IMG/VR virus record: IMGVR_UViG_3300032245_001746
Coordinates: 62,001 to 126,000 of that record
DNA: 64,000 nt
Direction: 5' to 3' (one strand)
Shown here: one piece after another, positions 11,481 to 32,029 of the stretch
How the letters are laid out: every line of letters starts with the position of its first letter
Position numbering within the stretch: the first letter of the stretch is position 1
Position numbers and translations under genes: made by a program
Notes under the pieces: model-generated
Seen by the model: the letters and a program-made list of their open reading frames with translations, nothing else
Told to the model about the DNA's origin: nothing
The model's database searches: none

Positions 11481-12203
11481 ATGCTGAAAATGTATTTAAT
11501 GCGAGGTTTACCAGGATCTGGTAAAAGCACTTTAGTAAAAGAATTATTGAAAAAATTCAACAAAGATGATGATTGTGTCTTTTCAACTGATAATTTTTAT
11601 ATTCCTGTAACTAAAAAAATACAAAATTTATTAAAAACAGATAATTCTTCTCTTGAAGAGGTAATAAAACTATCTCAAGAAATTTTTGATATTTGGAACT
11701 CTTCAAATAAATATGAAGAAAAAAATTTAAATTTAGATTTGTATTTAAAATTTAACAAATTGTTCAATGATGGAAAATATGAAGAGTCAATCTTATTTGT
11801 TAAAAACAATTCTTTTTTTGAATACTTAGAATATTGTAATAACTTTTCTGTAACTAAATGCGGAATGTTTCATAAACAAAATTTTAATAATTTTAAAAAA
11901 GCTATTGATGATAAAAAAGAATTAGTAATTGTTGATAATACTAATGTTTCTTTAAAAGAAGGCTCTAAATATATTAAATATGCTCATGAAAACAAATACG
12001 ATATTGAAATCAAAGAACCAGAATCTCCACATTGGAAAAAACATGTTCATATTTTAAAACATAAAGATGGATCTGAATTAAAAGAATTTATAAATATTCT
12101 TTTTGAAAAGAATAAACATGGTGTGCCTAAAGATGTTATTTTAAATATGGCAAATAAATGGTTTTATAAACCTACAATTAAAGATTTTTTAAAACATGAT
12201 TGA
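11481..12203 (+). CDS. AAA_33 / N4BP2-like P-loop (polynucleotide) kinase
   Basis: MYLMRGLPGSGKST, FSTDNF, VIVDNTN, NKHGVP. Confidence 0.8.
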   Translation: MLKMYLMRGLPGSGKSTLVKELLKKFNKDDDCVFSTDNFYIPVTKKIQNLLKTDNSSLEEVIKLSQEIFDIWNSSNKYEEKNLNLDLYLKFNKLFNDGKYEESILFVKNNSFFEYLEYCNNFSVTKCGMFHKQNFNNFKKAIDDKKELVIVDNTNVSLKEGSKYIKYAHENKYDIEIKEPESPHWKKHVHILKHKDGSELKEFINILFEKNKHGVPKDVILNMANKWFYKPTIKDFLKHD

Positions 12204-18741: not shown

Positions 18742-19248
18742 TCACATTTTTTCCAATCTTTTGATTACTTTTTCTATATTTTTTTCTAATTCTGTTTCAA
18801 TTCTAGATCTTGAAGCAAATACGCTATCTAATGCTGCTTTCATTTCAATTGTAATTTCTGCTTTTCCTTTTATGTTCTTTACAACAATTGTTGTAGATTG
18901 ATCTTTTAAATTACCAGTTAATGGTCTAATCATTTCGACTTGGAATATTCCTTCTTCTTCATTTATTTTTCTTGTTTCTTTTGCAACAAATGTTGATGTA
19001 CCAATTGCATTTTTATTTTGAATTTGAAGCAAATCTTTTTCTCTTTTTAAAACTACCGTACCAATTTCTTTATAAAGTATATCTTGTTTAAAATATATTT
19101 TATTAATACATTCTTCATAATCCATATCTGTCATTCTTGTTATTTTTGTTTCACCCTCACCAGCAATACAAATATTTGGTAACAACAATATTGAAAAAAA
19201 TAAATATTTAAACATAAAAACTCCTTTTTTATTATTTATCCAATACAT
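18742..19248 (-). CDS. Hypothetical protein with signal-peptide-like N-terminus (start probably 19215)
   Basis: MFKYLFFSILLLPNICIA preceded by AGGAG. Confidence 0.6.
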   Translation of the reverse strand: MYWINNKKGVFMFKYLFFSILLLPNICIAGEGETKITRMTDMDYEECINKIYFKQDILYKEIGTVVLKREKDLLQIQNKNAIGTSTFVAKETRKINEEEGIFQVEMIRPLTGNLKDQSTTIVVKNIKGKAEITIEMKAALDSVFASRSRIETELEKNIEKVIKRLEKM

Positions 19249-19280
19249 AAATAATAAAATATAAAAGTTTTGAGGTTTAT

Positions 19281-19958
19281 ATGAATTTTAAAAAATATTA
19301 TGAAAACTCTTCAGTTGCAGTTAAAGTATTGAGAGATCAAGATTCAATTGATGCAAAATTCATACAAGAAATTGATAAATTAAAAAAATCAATAATGGAA
19401 TATGTTGGAAATAGATTTGCAAATATTTTAAATATAAGTGGTAAAAATCATTTTTCAACAATTGCTACAATGGCAAATACAAATAATGAAGTTATCAATC
19501 ATTTAATGAAATTATCAGAAATTGATGTTCAAATATTAGATTTTTTATATTCTGCACAAATTGTTCATTTTAATCAGATATTAAGATCAATACCAGAAAC
19601 TTTTGCTGAATTAGCAGATATTATGGAAAGAATTAGTCAAAATGATTTAGTACCAGATTTAACACATACTAAAAACGCAATTGATTATTCTTTAGCTAAA
19701 ATTAAAAAAAATGCTTCTAGTATGTTGAAAACAATTCAAATGAATGAAGAATTATTAAAAATTTCTTTAGCAAATGAAAAATTATTTCAATACATGTATA
19801 AATTTAAAAATAATCAACAAAAAGAAGCAGAAAGTTGGATAATAAATGTGGCTACATGGTATAATATTTATGTTCCAAACTTTATCGATGTTTGTTCAAA
19901 TTATGCTAACATAACAATTCAAAATTTGAACCATTATGTTTTAAATCAAGAAAATTAA
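19281..19958 (+). CDS. Hypothetical protein with capsid-targeting-like N-terminus
   Basis: MNFKKYYENS; RBS GAGG; TAAATA upstream. Confidence 0.7.
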   Translation: MNFKKYYENSSVAVKVLRDQDSIDAKFIQEIDKLKKSIMEYVGNRFANILNISGKNHFSTIATMANTNNEVINHLMKLSEIDVQILDFLYSAQIVHFNQILRSIPETFAELADIMERISQNDLVPDLTHTKNAIDYSLAKIKKNASSMLKTIQMNEELLKISLANEKLFQYMYKFKNNQQKEAESWIINVATWYNIYVPNFIDVCSNYANITIQNLNHYVLNQEN

Positions 19959-19970
19959 AGAAAGGTTTTT

Positions 19971-20273
19971 ATGGCTCTTACTCAAAAATTATTATTTACT
20001 CAAGATTATTCTGAATATCCAATTACTTTTAATTATTTAAGTAACGAAATTGCAAGAATAGACAGAGAAGGTATCTTTCACTTCTGCGTAGAACCTTCTG
20101 ATGAAAACACAAAGAAGTTTGTAGACTTATTGCAGAATTTGTTCAATCGAAAAATTACTGGTTTGAACGTTGTAGAAAAAAAATCCAAAAACTTGTTTAC
20201 AAACACTGACAACAACACGTATAGTTCTGATGACAATTCTGATGTTGTAGAAGAATTTGATCTTCTAAAATAA
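19971..20273 (+). CDS. Hypothetical protein
   Basis: 100-aa ORF with AAGG RBS. Confidence 0.65.
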   Translation: MALTQKLLFTQDYSEYPITFNYLSNEIARIDREGIFHFCVEPSDENTKKFVDLLQNLFNRKITGLNVVEKKSKNLFTNTDNNTYSSDDNSDVVEEFDLLK

Positions 20274-20287
20274 TTTTCAAAATTTTT

Positions 20288-20317
20288 TTGAAAAAAAACA
20301 ATCAACTACCATATAAT
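20288..20317 (+). promoter_or_regulatory. Sigma70-type promoter for the leader/tRNA operon
   Basis: TTGAAA (20288-20293), 18-nt spacer, TATAAT (20312-20317). Confidence 0.6.
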
Positions 20318-20342
20318 AATTAAACTTAAAAGGAAATTTAAA

Positions 20343-20423
20343 ATGTCATATTTATTTAGTTCATATTTGTATAGTTCATCCTCGCTCTTTATGAGCGGAA
20401 GGACTAGTCTTGCTGTATGCTAA
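20343..20423 (+). CDS. Putative attenuator leader peptide MSYLFSSYLYSSSSLFMSGRTSLAVC
   Basis: AAGGAA RBS; codons 2-16 encode only Ser/Tyr/Leu/Phe, matching the downstream tRNAs; last codons overlap the antiterminator strand. Confidence 0.75.
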   Translation: MSYLFSSYLYSSSSLFMSGRTSLAVC

Positions 20424-20464
20424 GTAAATGAGGAAATAGGAATAAAAACCTCGGCATCGCAAGA
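20408..20464 (+). promoter_or_regulatory. Putative antiterminator helix
   Basis: TCTTGC (20408-13) pairs GCAAGA (20459-64); ATGCT (20417-21) pairs GGCAT (20453-57); excludes the terminator. Confidence 0.65.
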
Positions 20465-20479
20465 TGCCGAGGTTTTTTT
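20444..20479 (+). terminator. Strong intrinsic terminator (attenuator) in front of the tRNA array
   Basis: CCTCGGCATC-GCAA-GATGCCGAGG perfect 10-bp stem followed by T7. Confidence 0.9.
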
Positions 20480-20484
20480 GTTTT

Positions 20485-20567
20485 ATAGGTTAAAGAGAAT
20501 CTGGGAATTCTGACGGAAAATAAACCGTTGTCTTTTGACTGTTGTGGTTCGAATCCACATGCCTATA
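20485..20567 (+). pseudogene. Degenerate tRNA (Tyr-like scaffold)
   Basis: Acceptor ATAGGT/GCCTAT, T-arm TGTGG-TTCGAAT-CCACA, but an 8-nt anticodon loop AAAATAAA. Confidence 0.55.
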
Positions 20568-20601
20568 TTTGTTCTTTTAAAATTTAAAATATATTTATTA
20601 T

Positions 20602-20683
20602 GCGTTGATATGGCAAGTGGATAAAGCCGGGTGACTGTAAATCACTTCTTAATTGTTCGGGGGTTCGAATCCCTCTCAACGCA
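20602..20683 (+). tRNA. tRNA-Tyr(GTA)
   Basis: GCGTTGA/TCAACGC; GGTGA-CTGTAAA-TCACT; T-loop TTCGAAT. Confidence 0.9.
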
Positions 20684-20689
20684 CTTTAT

Positions 20690-20776
20690 AGATGGTTTTA
20701 CTATTGGCTAGGTTAACTTAGTTGGAAACTAAGAAGGCGTTAATTCGCTTTACAAGTTCGATTCTTGTACCATCTG
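20690..20776 (+). tRNA. tRNA-Ser(GGA)
   Basis: AGATGGT/ACCATCT, G73; CTTAG-TTGGAAA-CTAAG; long variable arm. Confidence 0.85.
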
Positions 20777-20784
20777 TTTTATTT

Positions 20785-20866
20785 AGAGTCGCTTCAATGT
20801 GGGTATTGGAGAAGTCTGTAAAACTTCTGCCCTATGGGCAAAACAGTTCGATTCTGTACGACTCTA
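20785..20866 (+). tRNA. tRNA-Tyr(GTA)
   Basis: AGAGTCG/CGACTCT; GAAGT-CTGTAAA-ACTTC; variable arm TGCCC/GGGCA. Confidence 0.85.
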
Positions 20867-20880
20867 CTTGTTGTTATTTT

Positions 20881-20970
20881 AGATGGGTAGACCTATTGGT
20901 AGGTCAGATTATTTGCTAAATAATTAGGGCGGGTCAAACCGTCTTGCAAGTTCGATTCTTGTCCCATCTG
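20881..20970 (+). tRNA. tRNA-Ser(GCT)
   Basis: AGATGGG/CCCATCT, G73; ATTAT-TTGCTAA-ATAAT; long variable arm. Confidence 0.88.
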
Positions 20971-20990
20971 CTTGGTTTTTTATTTTATAT

Positions 20991-21081
20991 AGATTGGTAA
21001 CTGGACAGGCGTGCCAGCATTGTTTTGAAAACAATTGGAGCCATTGAGAAATGGCTTGGGATTCGATTTCTCACCTCTCTG
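20991..21081 (+). tRNA. tRNA-Ser(TGA), two acceptor-stem mismatches
   Basis: ATTGT-TTTGAAA-ACAAT; long variable arm; AGATTGG/CCTCTCT, G73. Confidence 0.75.
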
Positions 21082-21101
21082 CTTTGTTTATTTTATAATA
21101 T

Positions 21102-21177
21102 GGACGGTGAGCTAGTGTGGTCATTTAAGCGGAAATTTGAAAGATTTCAGAACTCAGTTCGATTCTGAGACCGTCCA
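21102..21177 (+). tRNA. tRNA-Phe(GAA)
   Basis: GGACGGT/ACCGTCC; GAAAT-TTGAAAG-ATTTC; CTCAG-TTCGATT-CTGAG. Confidence 0.85.
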
Positions 21178-21247
21178 CTTTTAAAGAATTTATAAAATTC
21201 GAACATTATTTTTCTTAAAATTAAATACGCTATTACTGTAATAGTGT

Positions 21248-21964
21248 ATGAGCAAAATAATTTATACAAAAGAAGTGTTAGAAAAAGCAGTAAAAGAAGC
21301 AAGTTACTTAACTGAAGTATTTAAAATACTTAATGCAAGACAAGGAGGAAATACTTATCAAAGAATAAAAATATTAATTAAAGAGTATAAAATAGACACA
21401 TCTCATTTTTTGAATGGAAAATATAAAGGATTTTTAAAATCTGGAATTGCTAATAAAAAATGTCATTTAAAAATCCTTGTAAATGATAAATCTAGAAATA
21501 GAAGAGAAAGTAGTTATTTATTAAAACGTGCATTAATAGAAAGTGGTCGAATTCATGTTTGTGAATGCTGTGGTTTGAAACCTGAATGGAATGGTAAAGA
21601 ATTAACACTTCAAGTTGATCATATAGATGGAAATTGGTTAGATAATAGAAAAGAAAATTTAAGATTTTTATGTCCTAATTGTCATACTCAAACAAAAACA
21701 TTTGGAAATCAAAAGGAACAAAAAAAATGTGAAAATTGTAACATGAAAATAGGAAGAAAATCTCGATGGTGTAAGCGTTGTTTTCCATTATTTGTTTTTA
21801 TAAATAAAAGAAAAGTAAAAGACAGACCAGAATTACATGTATTAAACCAAGAAGTAAAAGAACTTGGGTATGTAGGAACTGGTAGAAAATATGGCGTAAG
21901 TGATAATGCTATTAAAAAATGGATTAAAACAGAAACTAAAAAATTAAATATTACAAATAAATAG
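21248..21964 (+). CDS. HNH homing endonuclease inside the tRNA array
   Basis: CECCG..WNGKELTLQVDHIDGNWLDNRKENLRFLCPNCH; C-terminal HTH (GRKYGVSDNAIKKW). Confidence 0.9.
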   Translation: MSKIIYTKEVLEKAVKEASYLTEVFKILNARQGGNTYQRIKILIKEYKIDTSHFLNGKYKGFLKSGIANKKCHLKILVNDKSRNRRESSYLLKRALIESGRIHVCECCGLKPEWNGKELTLQVDHIDGNWLDNRKENLRFLCPNCHTQTKTFGNQKEQKKCENCNMKIGRKSRWCKRCFPLFVFINKRKVKDRPELHVLNQEVKELGYVGTGRKYGVSDNAIKKWIKTETKKLNITNK

Positions 21965-21982
21965 TAAATATAGTGTTTATAT

Positions 21983-22065
21983 GTTCGCGTGATGAAATTT
22001 GGGATACATGATGGTCTAAGAAGCCATTGCCGTAAGGCTTGCAGGTTTGATTTTTGTCGCGAACA
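21983..22065 (+). tRNA. tRNA-Leu(AAG)
   Basis: GTTCGCG/CGCGAAC; ATGGT-CTAAGAA-GCCAT; variable arm GCC-GTAA-GGC; weak T-arm. Confidence 0.75.
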
Positions 22066-22079
22066 CTTGTTGTTTTTAT

Positions 22080-22154
22080 GCTGTAGTACGCAAATAGGCA
22101 AAGCGGCAATACTTAAAATATTGTGATTCTGTCGTTCGACTCCGATCTACAGTA
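22080..22154 (+). tRNA. tRNA-Leu(TAA), short variable arm, imperfect T-stem
   Basis: GCTGTAG/CTACAGT; CAATA-CTTAAAA-TATTG. Confidence 0.7.
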
Positions 22155-22168
22155 CTTGTTATTTTTAT

Positions 22169-22242
22169 GCTCATGTGATGCAATTGGCAGACATTTCTCG
22201 TTTAAACCGAGGATCTTACAAGTTCAAGTCTTGTCATGAGCA
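22169..22242 (+). tRNA. tRNA-Leu(TAA), short variable arm
   Basis: GCTCATG/CATGAGC; TCTCG-TTTAAAC-CGAGG; ACAAG-TTCAAGT-CTTGT. Confidence 0.8.
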
Positions 22243-22251
22243 CTTTTATAT

Positions 22252-22329
22252 GCTTACGTGATGCAATTTGGTAGACATCTTTCGCTTAAAACGAAAGTTT
22301 TTTTGTAGGTTCGAGTCCTATCGTAAGCA
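22252..22329 (+). tRNA. tRNA-Leu(TAA), short variable arm
   Basis: GCTTACG/CGTAAGC; TTTCG-CTTAAAA-CGAAA; GTAGG-TTCGAGT-CCTAT. Confidence 0.85.
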
Positions 22330-22333
22330 CTAT

Positions 22334-22406
22334 CGGTCAATAACAATGATGGTTCATGTAGTCGTCTGAAGAACGACAAATCCCAGATCGTAACTGGGTT
22401 GACCGG
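22334..22406 (+). tRNA. tRNA-Phe(GAA), atypical T-loop and G73
   Basis: CGGTCAA/TTGACCG; GTCGT-CTGAAGA-ACGAC; CCCAG-ATCGTAA-CTGGG. Confidence 0.7.
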
Positions 22407-22415
22407 CTTTTATAT

Positions 22416-22499
22416 GTCCATGTGGTGAAATTTGGCAGCCACGCCAGCCTAAGAAACTGGTTCCTTAATGGAGTGTAGGTTCAAATCCTATCATGGACA
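22416..22499 (+). tRNA. tRNA-Leu(AAG)
   Basis: GTCCATG/CATGGAC; CCAGC-CTAAGAA-ACTGG; variable arm; GTAGG-TTCAAAT-CCTAT. Confidence 0.8.
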
Positions 22500-22513
22500 C
22501 TTGTTATTTTTAT

Positions 22514-22596
22514 GCCCATGTGATTGAAATTGGTAAACTTGGAAGTTTTAGAAACTTTCGCCTTCGGGCTTGCAGGTTCAACCCCTGTCGTGGGCA
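22514..22596 (+). tRNA. tRNA-Leu(TAG)
   Basis: GCCCATG/CGTGGGC; GAAGT-TTTAGAA-ACTTT; long variable arm. Confidence 0.85.
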
Positions 22597-22616
22597 CTTA
22601 TTATATTATTAAAAAT

Positions 22617-22690
22617 GGCTCAGTAGGCAACGGAAGACCACTTTTACTCAAAATAAAAGATGATTGTGAGTTCGACTCTCACCTGAGTTA
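22617..22690 (+). tRNA. tRNA-Leu(CAA), short variable arm
   Basis: GGCTCAG/CTGAGTT; TTTTA-CTCAAAA-TAAAA; GTGAG-TTCGACT-CTCAC. Confidence 0.8.
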
Positions 22691-22794
22691 CTTATATACA
22701 ATTATACTGTGAACAAATAGCAAATCTTACTAGGTTATTCTAGTGCTCATCAAACGTTGAAATAAATAATCTAAGTTATAATTGTATATTTTTT

Positions 22795-22879
22795 GGATTA
22801 GATTGAAAGCGGCTATTCTACTAAATTTCGAAAATTTAGAACTATTTTTAGTTTGCGAGTTCGACTCTTGCCTAATCCG
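22795..22879 (+). tRNA. tRNA-Ser(CGA)
   Basis: GGATTAG/CTAATCC, G73; TAAAT-TTCGAAA-ATTTA; long variable arm. Confidence 0.8.
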
Positions 22880-22913
22880 TTTTTAAAATTTAAGTTATTA
22901 TAATAAATATATT

Positions 22914-23078
22914 ATGAAAAATTTTAAACAATGGTTACAAGAAAACAATAGATGTTGGACTGGATACGAGCCAGTTCCAGGCAAAAAAGCTTTTTCAAAA
23001 GGATCATGTAGAAAAAAGAAGATCCAAAAAGAGAACTCATTTAATGAATGGTTAAAAAATAAATCATCACTTTTCTAA
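22914..23078 (+). CDS. 54-aa protein with capsid-targeting-like N-terminus and CWxGY...SC motif
   Basis: Manual translation MKNFKQWLQENNRCWTGYEPVPGKKAFSKGSCRKKK...; TAAATA upstream. Confidence 0.7.
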   Translation: MKNFKQWLQENNRCWTGYEPVPGKKAFSKGSCRKKKIQKENSFNEWLKNKSSLF

Positions 23079-23160
23079 AGTGAAAGTTTTTCTAACTTTT
23101 CAATTCAACTTTCTTTGAAGTTACTTATAATCATTTAAATCAAACTAAAGAAAGGCTTAT

Positions 23161-23733
23161 ATGAAAAATTTAAAAGATAAATTTTTAGATTTAAAAGAAA
23201 ATATTAAAAATACTTTAACAATTAAAGAAAAAGAAAAAGAATTAAAATCATTAAATGATAAAAAAAGAGCTGCAAATTTGCTTTATTTGCATGAAGAGTT
23301 GATTAAGTCTTTTAATGAAAAAAAACATTTATATGAAAATATTTTAATTTTAAATTCTTATGTTAAGAATAACCCTTTGGGTTATATTGAACCTAAATTT
23401 ATTTTTACACAAATAGACACAAATTTGAAAGCAGAAGTTGATGTTTTAGTAAATCTTAATTTTAATGACATTCAAATATTTGTGGAAGATATTATATTCT
23501 ATCTTATTGATGATAATAATCAATACAAATATGCAAAAGTTAGATATGATGATACAAGAATGAATTTCTCTGGTCAGTTAGGATGGGGAAAAAACTATTC
23601 TTCTAGTCAACCTATAGCTTTTAATAAAATTGAATCTGATAAAATAACTTGGATCAATTCAACAGATGAATTAACAGATAATTTACTTGATGAAGTCTTA
23701 AATAAAATTAAAAAAGATGCTAATTTAATTTAA
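23161..23733 (+). CDS. Hypothetical protein
   Basis: 190-aa ORF with AAGG RBS. Confidence 0.65.
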   Translation: MKNLKDKFLDLKENIKNTLTIKEKEKELKSLNDKKRAANLLYLHEELIKSFNEKKHLYENILILNSYVKNNPLGYIEPKFIFTQIDTNLKAEVDVLVNLNFNDIQIFVEDIIFYLIDDNNQYKYAKVRYDDTRMNFSGQLGWGKNYSSSQPIAFNKIESDKITWINSTDELTDNLLDEVLNKIKKDANLI

Positions 23734-24340
23734 TATATTTTTCCCAAATTTTATTACTTAATCTTACTCTAGAGTCATTTTCGTTCCATCCTAAATCAGC
23801 ATAAGGTATAACAAATCCATAACTTAAATGAATTTTACTTTTATCAGATTTATCCATCCAGTGTTGATAAAAATTAGCTTCAAAACAATATAAATCAAAC
23901 TTTTCAATAAGTAATTTTTCTTTATCTATGTAAATGTAATCTAAATCTGGACCATCAACAGATATGTTACATTTATAAGTAATATATCCTGGCAATCCCA
24001 CATCATAATGTTTTTTAACTTCGCCACCACTTCCTAGATAAATATATTGAAAAAACATATTTTCTTTATTAAGATTGATTTTTTTAGCTATTCTGTCAGC
24101 TATATTTATAAAAATTTCAGAAACATAATCTATTTGTGTAGTATCACCTTGATGTTTAGATATTTCTTTAGAAATATTTGATTTTGTAATATCATAAAGA
24201 AAAGTCCATCCGTTTGATGCTTCATTTAAAGCTTTAACATTTTTATTTTCAATTTCTGTTTTTGTTTTAATAAAAGATTTGGAAAAATCTATAATTTCTT
24301 TTGCTTCATCTGTGGTAATAAAATTATTTATTGTCTTCAT
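23720..24340 (-). CDS. 2OG-Fe(II) oxygenase-like protein
   Basis: INNFIT..E N-terminus, GGEVKKHYD, YKCNI, YQHW. Confidence 0.65.
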   Translation of the reverse strand: MKTINNFITTDEAKEIIDFSKSFIKTKTEIENKNVKALNEASNGWTFLYDITKSNISKEISKHQGDTTQIDYVSEIFINIADRIAKKINLNKENMFFQYIYLGSGGEVKKHYDVGLPGYITYKCNISVDGPDLDYIYIDKEKLLIEKFDLYCFEANFYQHWMDKSDKSKIHLSYGFVIPYADLGWNENDSRVRLSNKIWEKYIKLN

Positions 24341-30253: not shown

Positions 30254-31030
30254 ATGAGACTCGGAATATGCTATATGGTTTTTGATGGCGATGAATTATT
30301 AGAATTTGCCATTAAAAGTATAAGAAATGTTGTTGATTTTGTATCTGTTACATATCAAAAAGTATCCTATTTTGGAAATCCAGCAGATCCTAATTTGCTT
30401 CCTTTGTTAGAAAATCTAAAAAAACAAGGATTAATTGATGAAATTCTTCATTATGAAACAAATTTAGGTATACATCATAAACAAAATGAACTAAATTTAA
30501 GAAATTTAGGACTTGAAGCTTCTAAAAAAGCTGGCTGTACACACCATATATCCGCAGATGTTGATGAATTTTATAAACCAGATGAATTAACTTTTGCTAA
30601 AAATTATATGGCAGAAAATGATCACGATTTTTCTGCTGCATATTTGTATACTTATTATAAAGAACCAACTTACTTAGTTTATCCTGTTCAAAAATTATTG
30701 GTTTCTTTTATACATCCTGTACATAACGAATATAGAATGGATGTTCCATATCCTACTTTTCCTTTACATATGGAAACCACTCGTAGATTTGGAAAATGTA
30801 AAAATTATCATATTTTTGATCAAAATAATTTTATGATTCATCATATGAGCTATATTAGAAAAGATATAAGGAAAAAATTTCAAAACTCCGATAATGCTCA
30901 ATTTTATAAAATAGAAAAATTTATCAATAACTTTGATAAATACAAATTAGGAGAACGTGTGTGCTTACTCCCTGATTTTATGAATCGAAAAACAATAGAA
31001 GTTGATAATTATTTTAACATAAAAATATAA
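30254..31030 (+). CDS. GT-A fold glycosyltransferase (GT2-like)
   Basis: RNLGL...ISADVDEFY (DxD), HHMSYIR. Confidence 0.7.
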   Translation: MRLGICYMVFDGDELLEFAIKSIRNVVDFVSVTYQKVSYFGNPADPNLLPLLENLKKQGLIDEILHYETNLGIHHKQNELNLRNLGLEASKKAGCTHHISADVDEFYKPDELTFAKNYMAENDHDFSAAYLYTYYKEPTYLVYPVQKLLVSFIHPVHNEYRMDVPYPTFPLHMETTRRFGKCKNYHIFDQNNFMIHHMSYIRKDIRKKFQNSDNAQFYKIEKFINNFDKYKLGERVCLLPDFMNRKTIEVDNYFNIKI

Positions 31031-31038
31031 GGAATATT

Positions 31039-31407
31039 ATGGGTGCAGCATCAGTAACAGGTAAAGGAATAGGATCTTCAAATAAATTAACCGTTAAAGA
31101 ATTAGCTATTGCAGCAAACGGTCCACAAATTTATTTTTCAGGAATAATAACCTCTGCTGGATCGACTTTAAGTCCTCCTTCAAGTCCTCCTGCTACTTTA
31201 AGTAGATTAATATTTCCTTACCCATTACCAGGAAGTTCTAGTAATTATGCAGTAATGTTAACTACATTAAATGGTGGATATGCTTACATTTCTGATTTAG
31301 ATGAAAATACTAATGGTGATTTTACTGGTTTCTCATTTGTAACAGAAGCAGAATGTGATTTAATGTATTTAGTTGTTAGTTGCGGTATGAAGCCATTAAC
31401 TATATAA
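31039..31407 (+). CDS. Hypothetical protein, possibly structural
   Basis: MGAASVTGKGIGS; AAGGA RBS. Confidence 0.65.
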   Translation: MGAASVTGKGIGSSNKLTVKELAIAANGPQIYFSGIITSAGSTLSPPSSPPATLSRLIFPYPLPGSSSNYAVMLTTLNGGYAYISDLDENTNGDFTGFSFVTEAECDLMYLVVSCGMKPLTI

Positions 31408-32029
31408 TATTTTGAGTTTCACTATAAGTATTATTTGTTTTTATTATTGTATTTGTTAATGTAAACCTTTTAATATCAATATTCATTAAAAATATATCTA
31501 CCGCCTTGTGTATTGGAAAAAAACAATCCATTATTTTTTTAATGGATTGTTTTTTTATTAAATAACCATGTGTCCCAGCCAACACATGTTTTGGATAATA
31601 AATTCCATGAATTTTATTCCCAACATATTCTCCTTCTTTACAACAATTAGTATAACAATTAATTCCTAAATAAAATATGTCCCAATTTATATTCTTAATT
31701 CTATTCATTAGAATATTATATTTAATATTAAATCCATCAACGAAAAATACATCATCTTCTAACACTAAACTTATTTCGGCATCATTCTTAATTATTTCTT
31801 CATAGATTTTATAATGACTAAGAGAGCAACCTATTTCTCCTCTTGTTAATTTGCAGTTATTTGAAATAATGTTTTTATTTTTTAATTCTTCTGAATTTAA
31901 ATCATTACCATTAATTGCTTCAATAAAATTATAATTTTCTATCTTGTGTTTTTTAAATTCTTCAATTAAATACTTTTTTCTTTCTGTATTTTTCTTTAGA
32001 TTTATTACATAAATTGGTAATTCTTGCAT
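31400..32029 (-). CDS. Glycosyltransferase family 25
   Basis: YVINL..ER, AING, GEIGCSLSH, LVLEDD, GTHGYLI, VD. Confidence 0.9.
   Translation of the reverse strand: MQELPIYVINLKKNTERKKYLIEEFKKHKIENYNFIEAINGNDLNSEELKNKNIISNNCKLTRGEIGCSLSHYKIYEEIIKNDAEISLVLEDDVFFVDGFNIKYNILMNRIKNINWDIFYLGINCYTNCCKEGEYVGNKIHGIYYPKHVLAGTHGYLIKKQSIKKIMDCFFPIHKAVDIFLMNIDIKRFTLTNTIIKTNNTYSETQNII

What the first reader, a model, noticed from the sequence alone, without database searches (positions are those of the whole stretch)
20288..22879. Leader-peptide attenuator controlling a Tyr/Ser/Phe/Leu-only phage tRNA array
Seen: promoter (20288-20317), RBS AAGGAA and an unannotated 26-codon ORF (20343-20423). Codons 2-16 are TCA TAT TTA TTT AGT TCA TAT TTG TAT AGT TCA TCC TCG CTC TTT, i.e. 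15 consecutive Ser/Tyr/Leu/Phe codons. All 15 identifiable tRNAs downstream carry only those amino acids: Tyr x2, Ser GGA/GCT/TGA/CGA, Phe x2, Leu AAG x2/TAA x3/TAG/CAA. The leader samples codons for nearly every isoacceptor, including GC-ending TCC, TCG and CTC in a very AT-rich genome. A perfect terminator (20449-20479) lies between leader and array. The leader's last codons and stop (20408-20424) can pair with the terminator's 5' arm and loop (20450-20464), and an upstream hairpin (CGCTC/GAGCG, TCCT/AGGA, 20379-20403) could act as a pause. Established: this is the layout of trp/his/ilv-type ribosome-mediated attenuators, and phage tRNAs can counter tRNA-cleaving defences (e.g. T5 tRNA-Tyr versus retron Ec78). 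Inference: a ribosome reaching the stop masks the antiterminator and transcription ends; stalling when any of these tRNAs is cleaved or uncharged releases the replacement tRNAs. I know of no described attenuator whose output is the tRNAs it senses.
Basis: partly seen in the sequence, partly recalled or inferred. Interest (0 to 1): 0.95.

Follow-up and report, generated by a model that had tools for sequence, protein, structure and literature searches.

The report
Leader-peptide attenuator before phage tRNA genes
A giant phage seems to switch on its serine, tyrosine, leucine and phenylalanine tRNA genes only when ribosomes stall on a tiny upstream test gene made almost entirely of codons for those four amino acids; I found no earlier description of this classic bacterial device controlling tRNA genes.

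Summary
A Shine-Dalgarno-led 26-codon ORF (20343-20423) has 15 consecutive Ser/Tyr/Leu/Phe codons. A strong intrinsic terminator follows (20444-20477 plus U-tract), then a tRNA array that ARAGORN reads as Tyr, Ser, Phe and Leu only.

The window is part of a phage of more than 500 kb with very few relatives. I recovered six distinct leader-terminator sequences in three ORF lineages.
- All keep the SD, the ATG, a 26-27-codon frame and the TAA at the same structural place. One lineage has an in-frame extra Ser codon.
- Between lineages, 14 of 45 bases and 8 of 15 residues change, yet every codon stays in the four-amino-acid set. Only 0.03% of random substitution sets do this.
- Three mutually exclusive helices are conserved: P1 (early codons with the stop region), an antiterminator (ORF 3' end with the terminator 5' arm and loop, which co-varies) and the terminator (three compensatory pairs).
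- Footprint-constrained folds behave like a trp/his attenuator.
- Every relative has the same tRNA set directly downstream.

My verdict is a ribosome-mediated attenuator feeding back on the tRNAs it uses: a new variant of a known kind, supported in silico only. An internal promoter and the rest of the genome's tRNA content remain open.

The parts
20196..20225 (+). Upstream sigma-70-like promoter candidate (TTTACA-18-TATAGT), overlapping the end of the 100-aa ORF
   Evidence: 10 of 12 positions. The homologous DNA in relatives is intergenic and reads TTTACA-17-TATAAT.
20288..20317 (+). Sigma-70-like promoter candidate TTGAAA-18-TATAAT. Its -10 lies in the conserved block ACTACMATATAWTAA (20305-20319).
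   Evidence: 11 of 12 positions. The block is invariant across six sequences. It does not recur in the window above chance.
20330..20335 (+). Shine-Dalgarno AAGGAA, 7 nt before the ATG
   Evidence: AAGGAA is invariant in all six sequences, 7-8 nt before the ATG. 32% of long ORFs in the window have an SD-like motif, against 6% of random sites.
20343..20423 (+). Leader ORF, 26 codons plus TAA (MSYLFSSYLYSSSSLFMSGRTSLAVC*)
   Evidence: The frame, start and stop are conserved in three lineages, with an in-frame 3-nt insertion in lineage C.
20346..20390 (+). Control region: 15 consecutive Ser/Tyr/Leu/Phe codons (TCA TAT TTA TTT AGT TCA TAT TTG TAT AGT TCA TCC TCG CTC TTT)
20345..20360 (+). Segment 1: 5' strand of helix P1, which pairs with 20419-20432
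   Evidence: Single-sequence folds and the RNAalifold consensus, columns 43-58 with 120-135.
20372..20408 (+). Hairpin P2 inside the ORF (core CGCTC 20383-20387 with GAGCG 20393-20397); candidate RNA polymerase pause hairpin
   Evidence: The core is kept in all six sequences. The pause role is inferred.
20408..20433 (+). Segment 2: the ORF 3' end, stop codon and 10 nt beyond. It forms either the P1 3' strand (20419-20432) or the antiterminator 5' strand.
20449..20464 (+). Segment 3: terminator 5' arm, loop and 2 nt more. It pairs with segment 2 in three short helices (antiterminator).
   Evidence: Duplex energy is -14.1 to -17.8 kcal/mol in all six sequences, with shuffle p of 0.002-0.03. 96.9% of cells are paired, against 22-48% in slid controls.
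20444..20480 (+). Intrinsic terminator: 15-bp stem, GCAA loop, U7
   Evidence: Three pairs carry compensatory changes across relatives.
20484..20567 (+). tRNA-like cloverleaf with an 8-nt anticodon loop; the first product of read-through and possibly a processing handle
20570..20601 (+). Conserved A+T-rich spacer holding a -10-like TAAAAT (20578-20583); possible internal promoter
   Evidence: It does not recur in the window.
20602..22880 (+). tRNA array: Tyr x2, Ser GGA/GCT/(TGA)/CGA, Phe x2, Leu (AAG)/TAA x3/AAG/TAG/CAA. It is interrupted by an HNH endonuclease gene at 21248-21964.

Best explanation
This is a ribosome-mediated (leader-peptide) transcription attenuator of the trp/his type. Its regulated output is the phage's own Tyr/Ser/Phe/Leu tRNA array.

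Transcription starts at a sigma-70-like promoter and the leader ORF is translated. Three outcomes are possible.
- Ample supply: if the tRNAs for its 15-18 consecutive Ser/Tyr/Leu/Phe codons are plentiful, the ribosome reaches the TAA. It then covers segment 2 (20408-20433), the terminator (20444-20477) folds and transcription stops about 5 nt before the first tRNA-like gene.
- No translation: helix P1 (20345-20360 with 20419-20432) sequesters segment 2, and transcription also terminates.
- Short supply: if any of these tRNAs is scarce, uncharged or damaged, the ribosome stalls in the control region and holds P1 open. Segment 2 pairs with the terminator's 5' arm and loop (20449-20464), and RNA polymerase reads through into the array.

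The tRNAs made then relieve the stall, which gives negative feedback.

What the sequence shows: the ORF, its codon restriction, the three alternative helices, the terminator, the gene order and their conservation. What is inferred: translation of the leader, coupling to transcription, the pause role of hairpin P2, and the physiological trigger.
For: 1. Conservation of the ORF as an ORF. Six distinct sequences in three lineages (A = window, B, C) keep AAGGAA, the ATG, 26-27 codons and TGC-TAA. Lineage C has an in-frame insertion of a Ser codon.

2. Codon-set constraint rather than peptide constraint.
- S/Y/L/F runs are 15, 17 and 18 codons long.
- Frame-specific enrichment has p of about 6e-5 in both A and B.
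- A and B differ at 14 of 45 bases and 8 of 15 residues, yet all codons stay in the set. Only 0.03% of composition-matched random substitution sets do so.
- The exchanges (Ser to Leu, Tyr or Phe) are chemically non-conservative.

3. Architecture.
- Single-sequence folds give P1, P2 and the terminator, with z-scores of about -6 in A and B. The RNAalifold consensus of all six sequences gives the same three helices.
- The terminator has three compensatory pairs.
- The antiterminator is present in all six, at the same alignment columns. Energies are -14.1 to -17.8 kcal/mol, with shuffle p of 0.002-0.03.
- Pairing segment 2 of the window with segment 3 of lineage B or C, or the reverse, lowers the duplex to between -7.4 and -12.3 kcal/mol.
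- On the alignment, 96.9% of cells are paired, against 22-48% when the partner is slid, and two pairs are compensatory.

4. Switch behaviour. With a 28-nt footprint at A-site codon 5 or 9, the nascent transcript folds into the antiterminator in all five sequences tested. With the footprint at the stop codon the antiterminator cannot form and the terminator folds.

5. Output. In every locus the terminator is followed directly by a tRNA-like gene and then Tyr, Ser and so on. Only S/Y/L/F tRNAs occur.

6. Matching. Every S/Y/L/F codon in the leaders can be read by an array anticodon, and the array covers all 16 codons of these four amino acids.

7. These four amino acids make up only 25.7% of the window's proteins, while Lys, Asn and Ile are each more common than any one of them. 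The tRNA set therefore does not simply track the amino acids the phage uses most.
Against: - There is no experimental evidence of any kind, and the host is unknown.
- Only three ORF lineages exist. B and C share the terminator apex, so the antiterminator covariation rests essentially on A versus B/C: 2 compensatory pairs, and 45 of 500 shuffles reach the observed values.
- Lineage C has an uncompensated mismatch in antiterminator helix a.
- With the ribosome footprint at A-site codons 13-16, the window and lineage C folds re-form P1 behind the ribosome.
- The terminator is thermodynamically much stronger than the antiterminator, so the switch must be kinetic, as it is in trp.
- A -10-like hexamer (TAAAAT / TATAAT / TACAAT) is conserved 18-25 nt upstream of the first canonical tRNA. 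It could be an independent promoter.
- The GC-ending codons TCG and CTC are explained by the P2 stem. They are not evidence that rare isoacceptors are deliberately sampled.
- Rfam leader families match only below threshold: His_leader 30.4 bits against a cut-off of 49, Phe_leader 24.8-27.2 against 55.
Confidence: 0.7

Rival explanations
1. The attenuator-like element is real but is not the main control of the tRNAs. The array from tRNA-Tyr onward is transcribed from an internal promoter in the conserved A+T-rich spacer. The terminator mainly insulates upstream transcription, and read-through adds at most the tRNA-like element or a minor boost.
For: A -10-like hexamer sits at the same place in all lineages, 18-25 nt before the next tRNA: TAAAAT in the window at 20578-20583, TATAAT in B, TACAAT in C. 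This spacer is far longer than the other inter-tRNA spacers and is conserved.
Against: - No -35 is conserved at a workable spacing: TCCACA-18 in the window becomes 21 nt or more in B and C.
- Such hexamers are at chance frequency in this 25%-GC DNA: 50 promoter-like sites found against 43 expected.
- The motif does not recur in the window.
- This reading does not explain why the leader codons match the tRNA set, or why the antiterminator co-varies.
Confidence: 0.12
2. The ORF encodes a small functional peptide, for example a membrane-active or toxic peptide, expressed as its own short transcript ending at the terminator. The match to the tRNA set is coincidental.
For: The ORF, the SD and the C-terminal pattern (Ser-x-Arg ... 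Cys-stop) are conserved. Arg is kept through a two-base change, AGG to CGA.
Against: - Eight of 15 residues differ between lineages through non-conservative swaps (Ser to Leu, Tyr or Phe) that preserve only set membership. That is not how functional peptides evolve.
- The C-terminal codons lie in P2, P1 and the antiterminator, so RNA constraints explain their conservation.
- The Arg codon change is also neutral for pairing: U-G becomes U-A.
Confidence: 0.05
3. The region is a non-coding structured RNA, either an sRNA or a processing or stability element at the 5' end of the tRNA precursor. The ORF is a by-product of T-rich sequence and of the helices.
For: The fold is strong and conserved (z-score about -6). 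A 15-nt tandem repeat generates part of the codon run.
Against: - The enrichment is frame-specific, p of about 6e-5 in two lineages, and is absent from the other frames.
- The indel is in frame and the SD is invariant at fixed spacing.
- The most divergent stretch, which is unpaired (codons 7-12), still holds only S/Y/L/F codons in all lineages.
Confidence: 0.05
4. The mechanism is the same, but the signal is amino-acid starvation or general translational stress in the host rather than loss of specific tRNAs. The array is simply up-regulated whenever translation slows.
For: Classical attenuators sense charged-tRNA supply (PMC1183508). Nothing in the sequence separates uncharged tRNAs from missing ones.
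Against: Four unrelated amino acids are sensed, and what they share is the downstream tRNA set. Making more tRNA does not relieve amino-acid starvation.
Confidence: 0.08

Closest known systems
Leader-peptide attenuators of amino-acid biosynthetic operons (trp, his, leu, thr, ilvGMEDA, pheA) in enterobacteria
   Same: - A short SD-led ORF with a block of regulatory codons.
- Three mutually exclusive helices (1:2, 2:3, 3:4), with an intrinsic terminator as 3:4.
- The stop codon is placed so that a terminating ribosome masks segment 2.
- As in his, the control region consists entirely of regulatory codons, a design feature discussed in PMC1183508.
- As in ilv and thr, more than one amino acid is sensed (my own knowledge).
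   Different: - The output is tRNA genes, not enzymes.
- Four amino acids are sensed, with up to 11 different codons that sample almost every isoacceptor in the array.
- It is encoded by a phage.
- There is no sequence homology; Rfam His_leader and Phe_leader match only below threshold.
- An extra conserved hairpin (P2) lies inside the ORF.
pheST attenuator (pheM leader) of E. coli, which controls phenylalanyl-tRNA synthetase
   Same: A leader-peptide attenuator whose output belongs to the translation machinery that serves the sensed codons (my own knowledge, not tested here).
   Different: It regulates a synthetase for one amino acid. Here the regulated products are the tRNAs themselves, for four amino acids.
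T-box riboswitches of Firmicutes
   Same: They sense tRNA status and decide between a terminator and an antiterminator upstream of translation-related genes.
   Different: T-boxes bind the uncharged tRNA directly, need no ORF and have a conserved T-box sequence. No T-box model matched, even at E <= 10 or E <= 1.
Phage tRNAs as counter-defence (T5 tRNA-Tyr against retron-Eco7 PtuAB; T1/T7 tRNA-Lys against PrrC; phage tRNA against PARIS)
   Same: Phage-encoded tRNAs replace host tRNAs that a defence destroys (PMC11555353, PMC10264068, PMC11464382). Here there are complete isoacceptor sets, including tRNAs for codons the phage hardly uses: TCG 43, CTC 16, CTG 8 occurrences in the window's long ORFs.
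   Different: In T5 the tRNA-Tyr is simply driven by a strong promoter (PMC11555353, section 8). No sensing element has been described. No defence system aimed at Tyr, Ser, Leu and Phe together is known to me.

Membership tests
Ribosome-mediated (leader-peptide) transcription attenuator | Short ORF with a ribosome-binding site in the 5' leader | tested here: met
   AAGGAA lies 7-8 nt before the ATG, and the ORF has 26-27 codons. Both are conserved in six sequences of three lineages.
Ribosome-mediated (leader-peptide) transcription attenuator | Cluster of regulatory codons cognate to what the operon supplies | tested here: met
   There are 15, 17 or 18 consecutive S/Y/L/F codons, and the downstream tRNAs are Tyr, Ser, Phe and Leu only. 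Set membership is under purifying selection.
Ribosome-mediated (leader-peptide) transcription attenuator | Intrinsic terminator between the leader ORF and the regulated genes | tested here: met
   A 15-bp stem plus U7, with three compensatory pairs. The first tRNA-like gene starts about 5 nt after the U-tract.
Ribosome-mediated (leader-peptide) transcription attenuator | Antiterminator (2:3) that excludes the terminator, and a 1:2 helix that excludes the antiterminator | tested here: met
   P1 and the antiterminator share segment 2; the antiterminator and the terminator share segment 3. Support is moderate because only three lineages are available.
Ribosome-mediated (leader-peptide) transcription attenuator | Geometry: a ribosome at the stop codon masks segment 2, and a ribosome stalled at regulatory codons frees it | tested here: met
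   Footprint-constrained folding of five sequences. The result is clean for A-site codons 5 and 9, and less so for codons 13-16 in lineages A and C.
Ribosome-mediated (leader-peptide) transcription attenuator | Read-through depends on translation of the leader and on the supply of charged tRNA | not testable with these tools
   This needs reporter, Term-seq, Ribo-seq or in vitro coupled assays.
Rfam leader families (His_leader RF00514, Phe_leader RF01859, and others) | Score at or above the family's gathering threshold | tested here: not met
   His_leader scores 30.4 bits against 49, and Phe_leader 24.8-27.2 against 55. The minus strand of the terminator also gives His_leader 23.5 bits, so the hits largely reflect the terminator hairpin.
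T-box riboswitch | Match to the T-box covariance model (specifier loop and T-box sequence) | tested here: not met
   No T-box hit at E <= 10 in window 19800-23400, or at E <= 1 in L016, L017 and L018.

The most novel reading that the evidence does not exclude
The attenuator is an inducible counter-defence sensor. When a host or rival-phage tRNA nuclease, or any other attack on Ser, Tyr, Leu and Phe decoding, empties the pool, ribosomes stall on the leader. The phage then releases a complete, presumably resistant, replacement set for all 16 codons of these four amino acids. This would be the first case of a virus using a leader peptide to monitor the integrity of the host's tRNA pool.
Probability: 0.25. 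Interest if true: 0.95.

Novelty: new variant of a known kind. Interest (0 to 1): 0.85.

Why it matters
Why phages carry tRNA genes has been debated for decades. The candidates are codon compensation, host shut-off and escape from tRNA-cleaving defences, and almost nothing is known about how these genes are regulated.

A leader peptide whose codons mirror the downstream tRNA set would show that this phage measures decoding capacity for exactly those codons. It would then make its tRNAs on demand, which is a self-correcting loop.

It would extend a textbook mechanism, known for amino-acid biosynthesis and one synthetase operon, to tRNA genes and to a virus. It also gives a simple bioinformatic rule for finding more cases: look for a short ORF upstream of a tRNA array whose composition equals the array content.

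The element is about 200 nt and portable. It could serve as a reporter of the availability of specific tRNAs, for example to reveal which tRNAs an uncharacterised defence system destroys.

Tried and rejected
- GenBank phages: a distant-mode search with 19000-24000 found only HNH endonuclease fragments and one tRNA-Tyr, so there are no relatives there.
- IMG/VR: five scans (neighbour protein, terminator, spacer, odd tRNA-Phe, degenerate leader pattern) returned only the source contig.
- GTDB genomes: the degenerate leader pattern found nothing.
- The 100-aa upstream protein has no homologues other than itself. The short contigs carrying homologues of the 225-aa protein (L006-L008) stop before the leader.
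- The informative relatives came from the 199-aa protein that sits upstream of the leader in L003.
- General phage promoter motif: neither the -10 block nor the spacer recurs in the window, and no shared motif was obvious in 31 upstream regions.
- Idea that the array is a set of class II (long variable arm) tRNAs aimed at a Schlafen-type nuclease: not supported. Several Leu tRNAs here are only 74-76 nt and Phe is class I. The one bacterial Schlafen characterised cleaves Lys, Met, Ala and others (PMC13056530).
- Idea that the set follows the amino acids the phage uses most: rejected. Lys, Asn and Ile are each more common than any of the four, and tRNAs are present for codons the phage hardly uses.
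- Literature searches for an attenuator-controlled tRNA operon found none.

Full report
**1. What is there**

The window is part of IMG/VR contig UViG_3300032245_001746 (319,857 bp). The same phage is also assembled as a 530,789-bp ENA scaffold that is identical over the 8.3 kb I could compare. It is therefore a phage of more than 500 kb, with about 25% G+C.

- A TTGAAA-18-TATAAT promoter-like site at 20288-20317.
- AAGGAA at 20330-20335.
- A 26-codon ORF at 20343-20423 whose codons 2-16 all encode Ser, Tyr, Leu or Phe.
- A 15-bp terminator stem at 20444-20477 with a GCAA loop and a U7 tract.
- A tRNA array at 20602-22880. ARAGORN reads it as Tyr x2, Ser x3, Phe x2 and Leu x6, and finds no tRNA elsewhere in the 64 kb.

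Two further copies are decayed but clearly homologous to intact orthologues: Leu-AAG-like and Ser-TGA-like. An HNH endonuclease gene splits the array.

**2. Is the codon run more than chance?**

- It is the longest S/Y/L/F run in any of the six frames of the window: 15 codons, against 11 for the next.
- The leader is T-rich, so I shuffled its own bases. Eighteen of 25 in-set codons was reached in 6e-5 of shuffles, and the other two frames of the same DNA give only 8-9.
- Part of the run is a 15-nt (five-codon) tandem repeat. The block therefore probably grew by in-frame duplication.
- S, Y, L and F make up 25.7% of residues in the window's long ORFs.

**3. Relatives**

The clade is rare.
- GenBank phages, IMG/VR and GTDB genomes yielded nothing beyond the source contig.
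- The 225-aa upstream protein has five homologues among 5.8 billion proteins. One of them lies on a 57-kb Logan contig (L003) that carries a diverged leader and the same array order.
- The protein upstream of the leader in L003 led to more contigs.
- The single metagenome scan gave a near-identical relative, L009.

In total I hold six distinct leader-terminator sequences in three ORF lineages:
- A (window, L009, L020): MSYLFSSYLYSSSSLFMSGRTSLAVC
- B (L003, L014, L018): MSSSFSYLSFSLSSLYLSDRYLSVIC
- C (L010, L017): MLSLFSYSLSFSLSSLYLSERYLPAIC

**4. Evidence that the ORF is read and that the constraint is on codon set**

All lineages keep AAGGAA at the same spacing, the ATG, the frame and TGC-TAA. 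Lineage C has a 3-nt insertion that adds one more Ser codon. The S/Y/L/F runs are 15, 17 and 18 codons long.

Between A and B, 14 of the 45 bases of codons 2-16 differ. This changes 9 codons and 8 residues, yet every codon remains Ser, Tyr, Leu or Phe. Composition-matched random substitution sets achieve that in 0.03% of trials.

The exchanges (Ser to Leu, Tyr or Phe) are chemically drastic. That argues against a functional peptide and for a rule of the form 'any codon read by an array tRNA'. The stretch that diverges most, codons 7-12, is unpaired in the consensus structure, so RNA pairing does not explain the pattern either.

**5. RNA architecture**

- Single-sequence folds of A and B give the same three elements, with z-scores of about -6.
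- RNAalifold on the six sequences gives P1 (codons 2-6 with the stop-codon region), an internal hairpin P2 and the terminator. Three terminator pairs carry compensatory changes.
- That pairing occurs at the same alignment columns in all six sequences, at -14.1 to -17.8 kcal/mol with shuffle p of 0.002-0.03. It weakens to between -7.4 and -12.3 kcal/mol when segment 2 of the window is offered the lineage B or C terminator, or the reverse.
- On the alignment 96.9% of cells are paired, against 22-48% with the partner slid by 1-3 columns, and two pairs are compensatory.
- P1 and the antiterminator share segment 2. The antiterminator and the terminator share segment 3. This is the 1:2 / 2:3 / 3:4 logic of trp-type attenuators.

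**6. Switch behaviour in silico**

I forced a 28-nt ribosome footprint to stay unpaired.
- With the A site at codon 5 or 9, the nascent transcript (3' arm of the terminator not yet made) folds into the antiterminator in all five sequences tested.
- With the ribosome at the stop codon, the antiterminator strand is covered and the terminator forms.
- Without a ribosome, P1 and the terminator form.
- For stalls at codons 13-16, the folds of A and C re-form P1 behind the ribosome. The first dozen codons are therefore probably the effective ones.
- The terminator is thermodynamically stronger than the antiterminator, so the decision must be kinetic, as in trp (my own knowledge).

A control region made wholly of regulatory codons is the his-like design that modelling links to high sensitivity (PMC1183508).

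**7. Output**

In every locus the U-tract is followed first by a tRNA-like cloverleaf, within about 5 nt in A and about 25 nt in B and C. Then come Tyr, Ser-GGA, Tyr, Ser-GCT, Ser-TGA, Phe and the Leu genes. No tRNA for any other amino acid occurs in any locus.

The array anticodons cover all 16 codons of the four amino acids, and every in-set leader codon is readable by one of them. The array includes tRNAs for codons the phage itself rarely uses (TCG, CTC, CTG), while the more common Lys, Asn and Ile have no tRNA here. The set therefore does not track the amino acids or codons the phage uses most.

**8. Weak points**

- All evidence is computational and the host is unknown.
- Three lineages give limited power, and B and C share the terminator apex.
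- Lineage C has one uncompensated mismatch in the antiterminator.
- A -10-like hexamer (TAAAAT, TATAAT or TACAAT) is conserved in the spacer 18-25 nt before the first canonical tRNA. No -35 is conserved, such hexamers are at chance density in this DNA and the motif does not recur. Even so, an internal promoter cannot be excluded.
- 'Only these four amino acids' is established for the window and the related loci, not for the other 470 kb or so of the genome.

**9. Comparison with known systems**

By architecture this meets every sequence-level criterion of a leader-peptide attenuator. It is not a member of any Rfam leader family: His_leader scores 30.4 bits against a cut-off of 49, and Phe_leader 24.8-27.2 against 55. 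These hits come largely from the terminator hairpin. It is not a T-box.

Known attenuators regulate amino-acid biosynthesis, and in E. coli the Phe-tRNA synthetase operon (my own knowledge). Full-text searches found no attenuator that controls tRNA genes, in bacteria or in phages.

Phage tRNAs are known to rescue infection from tRNA-degrading defences. In the T5 case the tRNA is driven by a strong promoter rather than by a sensor (PMC11555353).

**10. Verdict**

I class it as a new variant of a known kind: a familiar mechanism with a new class of output, in a virus, forming a feedback loop on the tRNAs it uses. The idea that it is triggered by a tRNA-cleaving defence is attractive but remains inference, at about 0.25.

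Noticed in passing
window 20484-20567; also L003 about 11625-11710; second copies in L009, L017 and L018: A tRNA-like cloverleaf sits directly after the terminator. It has a 7-bp acceptor stem and a canonical T-arm, but its anticodon loop is 8-10 nt long and differs in sequence between relatives. It scores below threshold for both the tRNA and tRNA-Sec models. It may be a processing handle rather than a decoder.
   Followed up: partly
window 22692-22793; L003 12030-12118: An insert of about 100 nt lies inside the array. It is closed by a 13-15-bp A+U-rich inverted repeat and followed by a U6 run. It sits before a Ser tRNA in both genomes, but at different places in the array. Its nature is unknown: a mobile mini-element, a second terminator or a small RNA.
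   Followed up: partly
window 21248-21964 (+); L010 7212-8051 (-): HNH endonuclease genes interrupt the tRNA array at different positions and in different orientations in different relatives. L003 has none in the stretch of its array that was recovered.
   Followed up: partly
window 22334-22407: The 'tRNA-Phe(GAA)' has a non-canonical T-loop (AUCGUAA) and an odd D-arm, and the Rfam tRNA model does not see it. Yet it is 75/76 identical in L003, which makes it more conserved than the canonical tRNAs around it.
   Followed up: no
window 22080-22243 and 22617-22691: Three of the Leu tRNAs are only 75-76 nt long, so they lack the long variable arm usual for bacterial tRNA-Leu.
   Followed up: no
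window 20196-20225: The last 25 or so codons of the 100-aa ORF (19971-20273) overlap a TTTACA-18-TATAGT site. The homologous DNA in relatives is intergenic and reads TTTACA-17-TATAAT. The leader may have two tandem promoters, or the ORF's C-terminus may be a recent extension.
   Followed up: no
whole window; L020: The phage is assembled elsewhere as a 530,789-bp scaffold (ENA ERZ28594238). It is a very large, 25%-G+C phage with almost no relatives in public protein or phage collections.
   Followed up: partly
L003 versus window: The gene block of 258 aa, 122 aa and a 209-aa glycosyltransferase lies just upstream of the leader region in L003, L010 and L014, but about 10 kb downstream in the window (30254-32029). 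The leader-plus-array module therefore keeps its integrity while its neighbours are rearranged.
   Followed up: no
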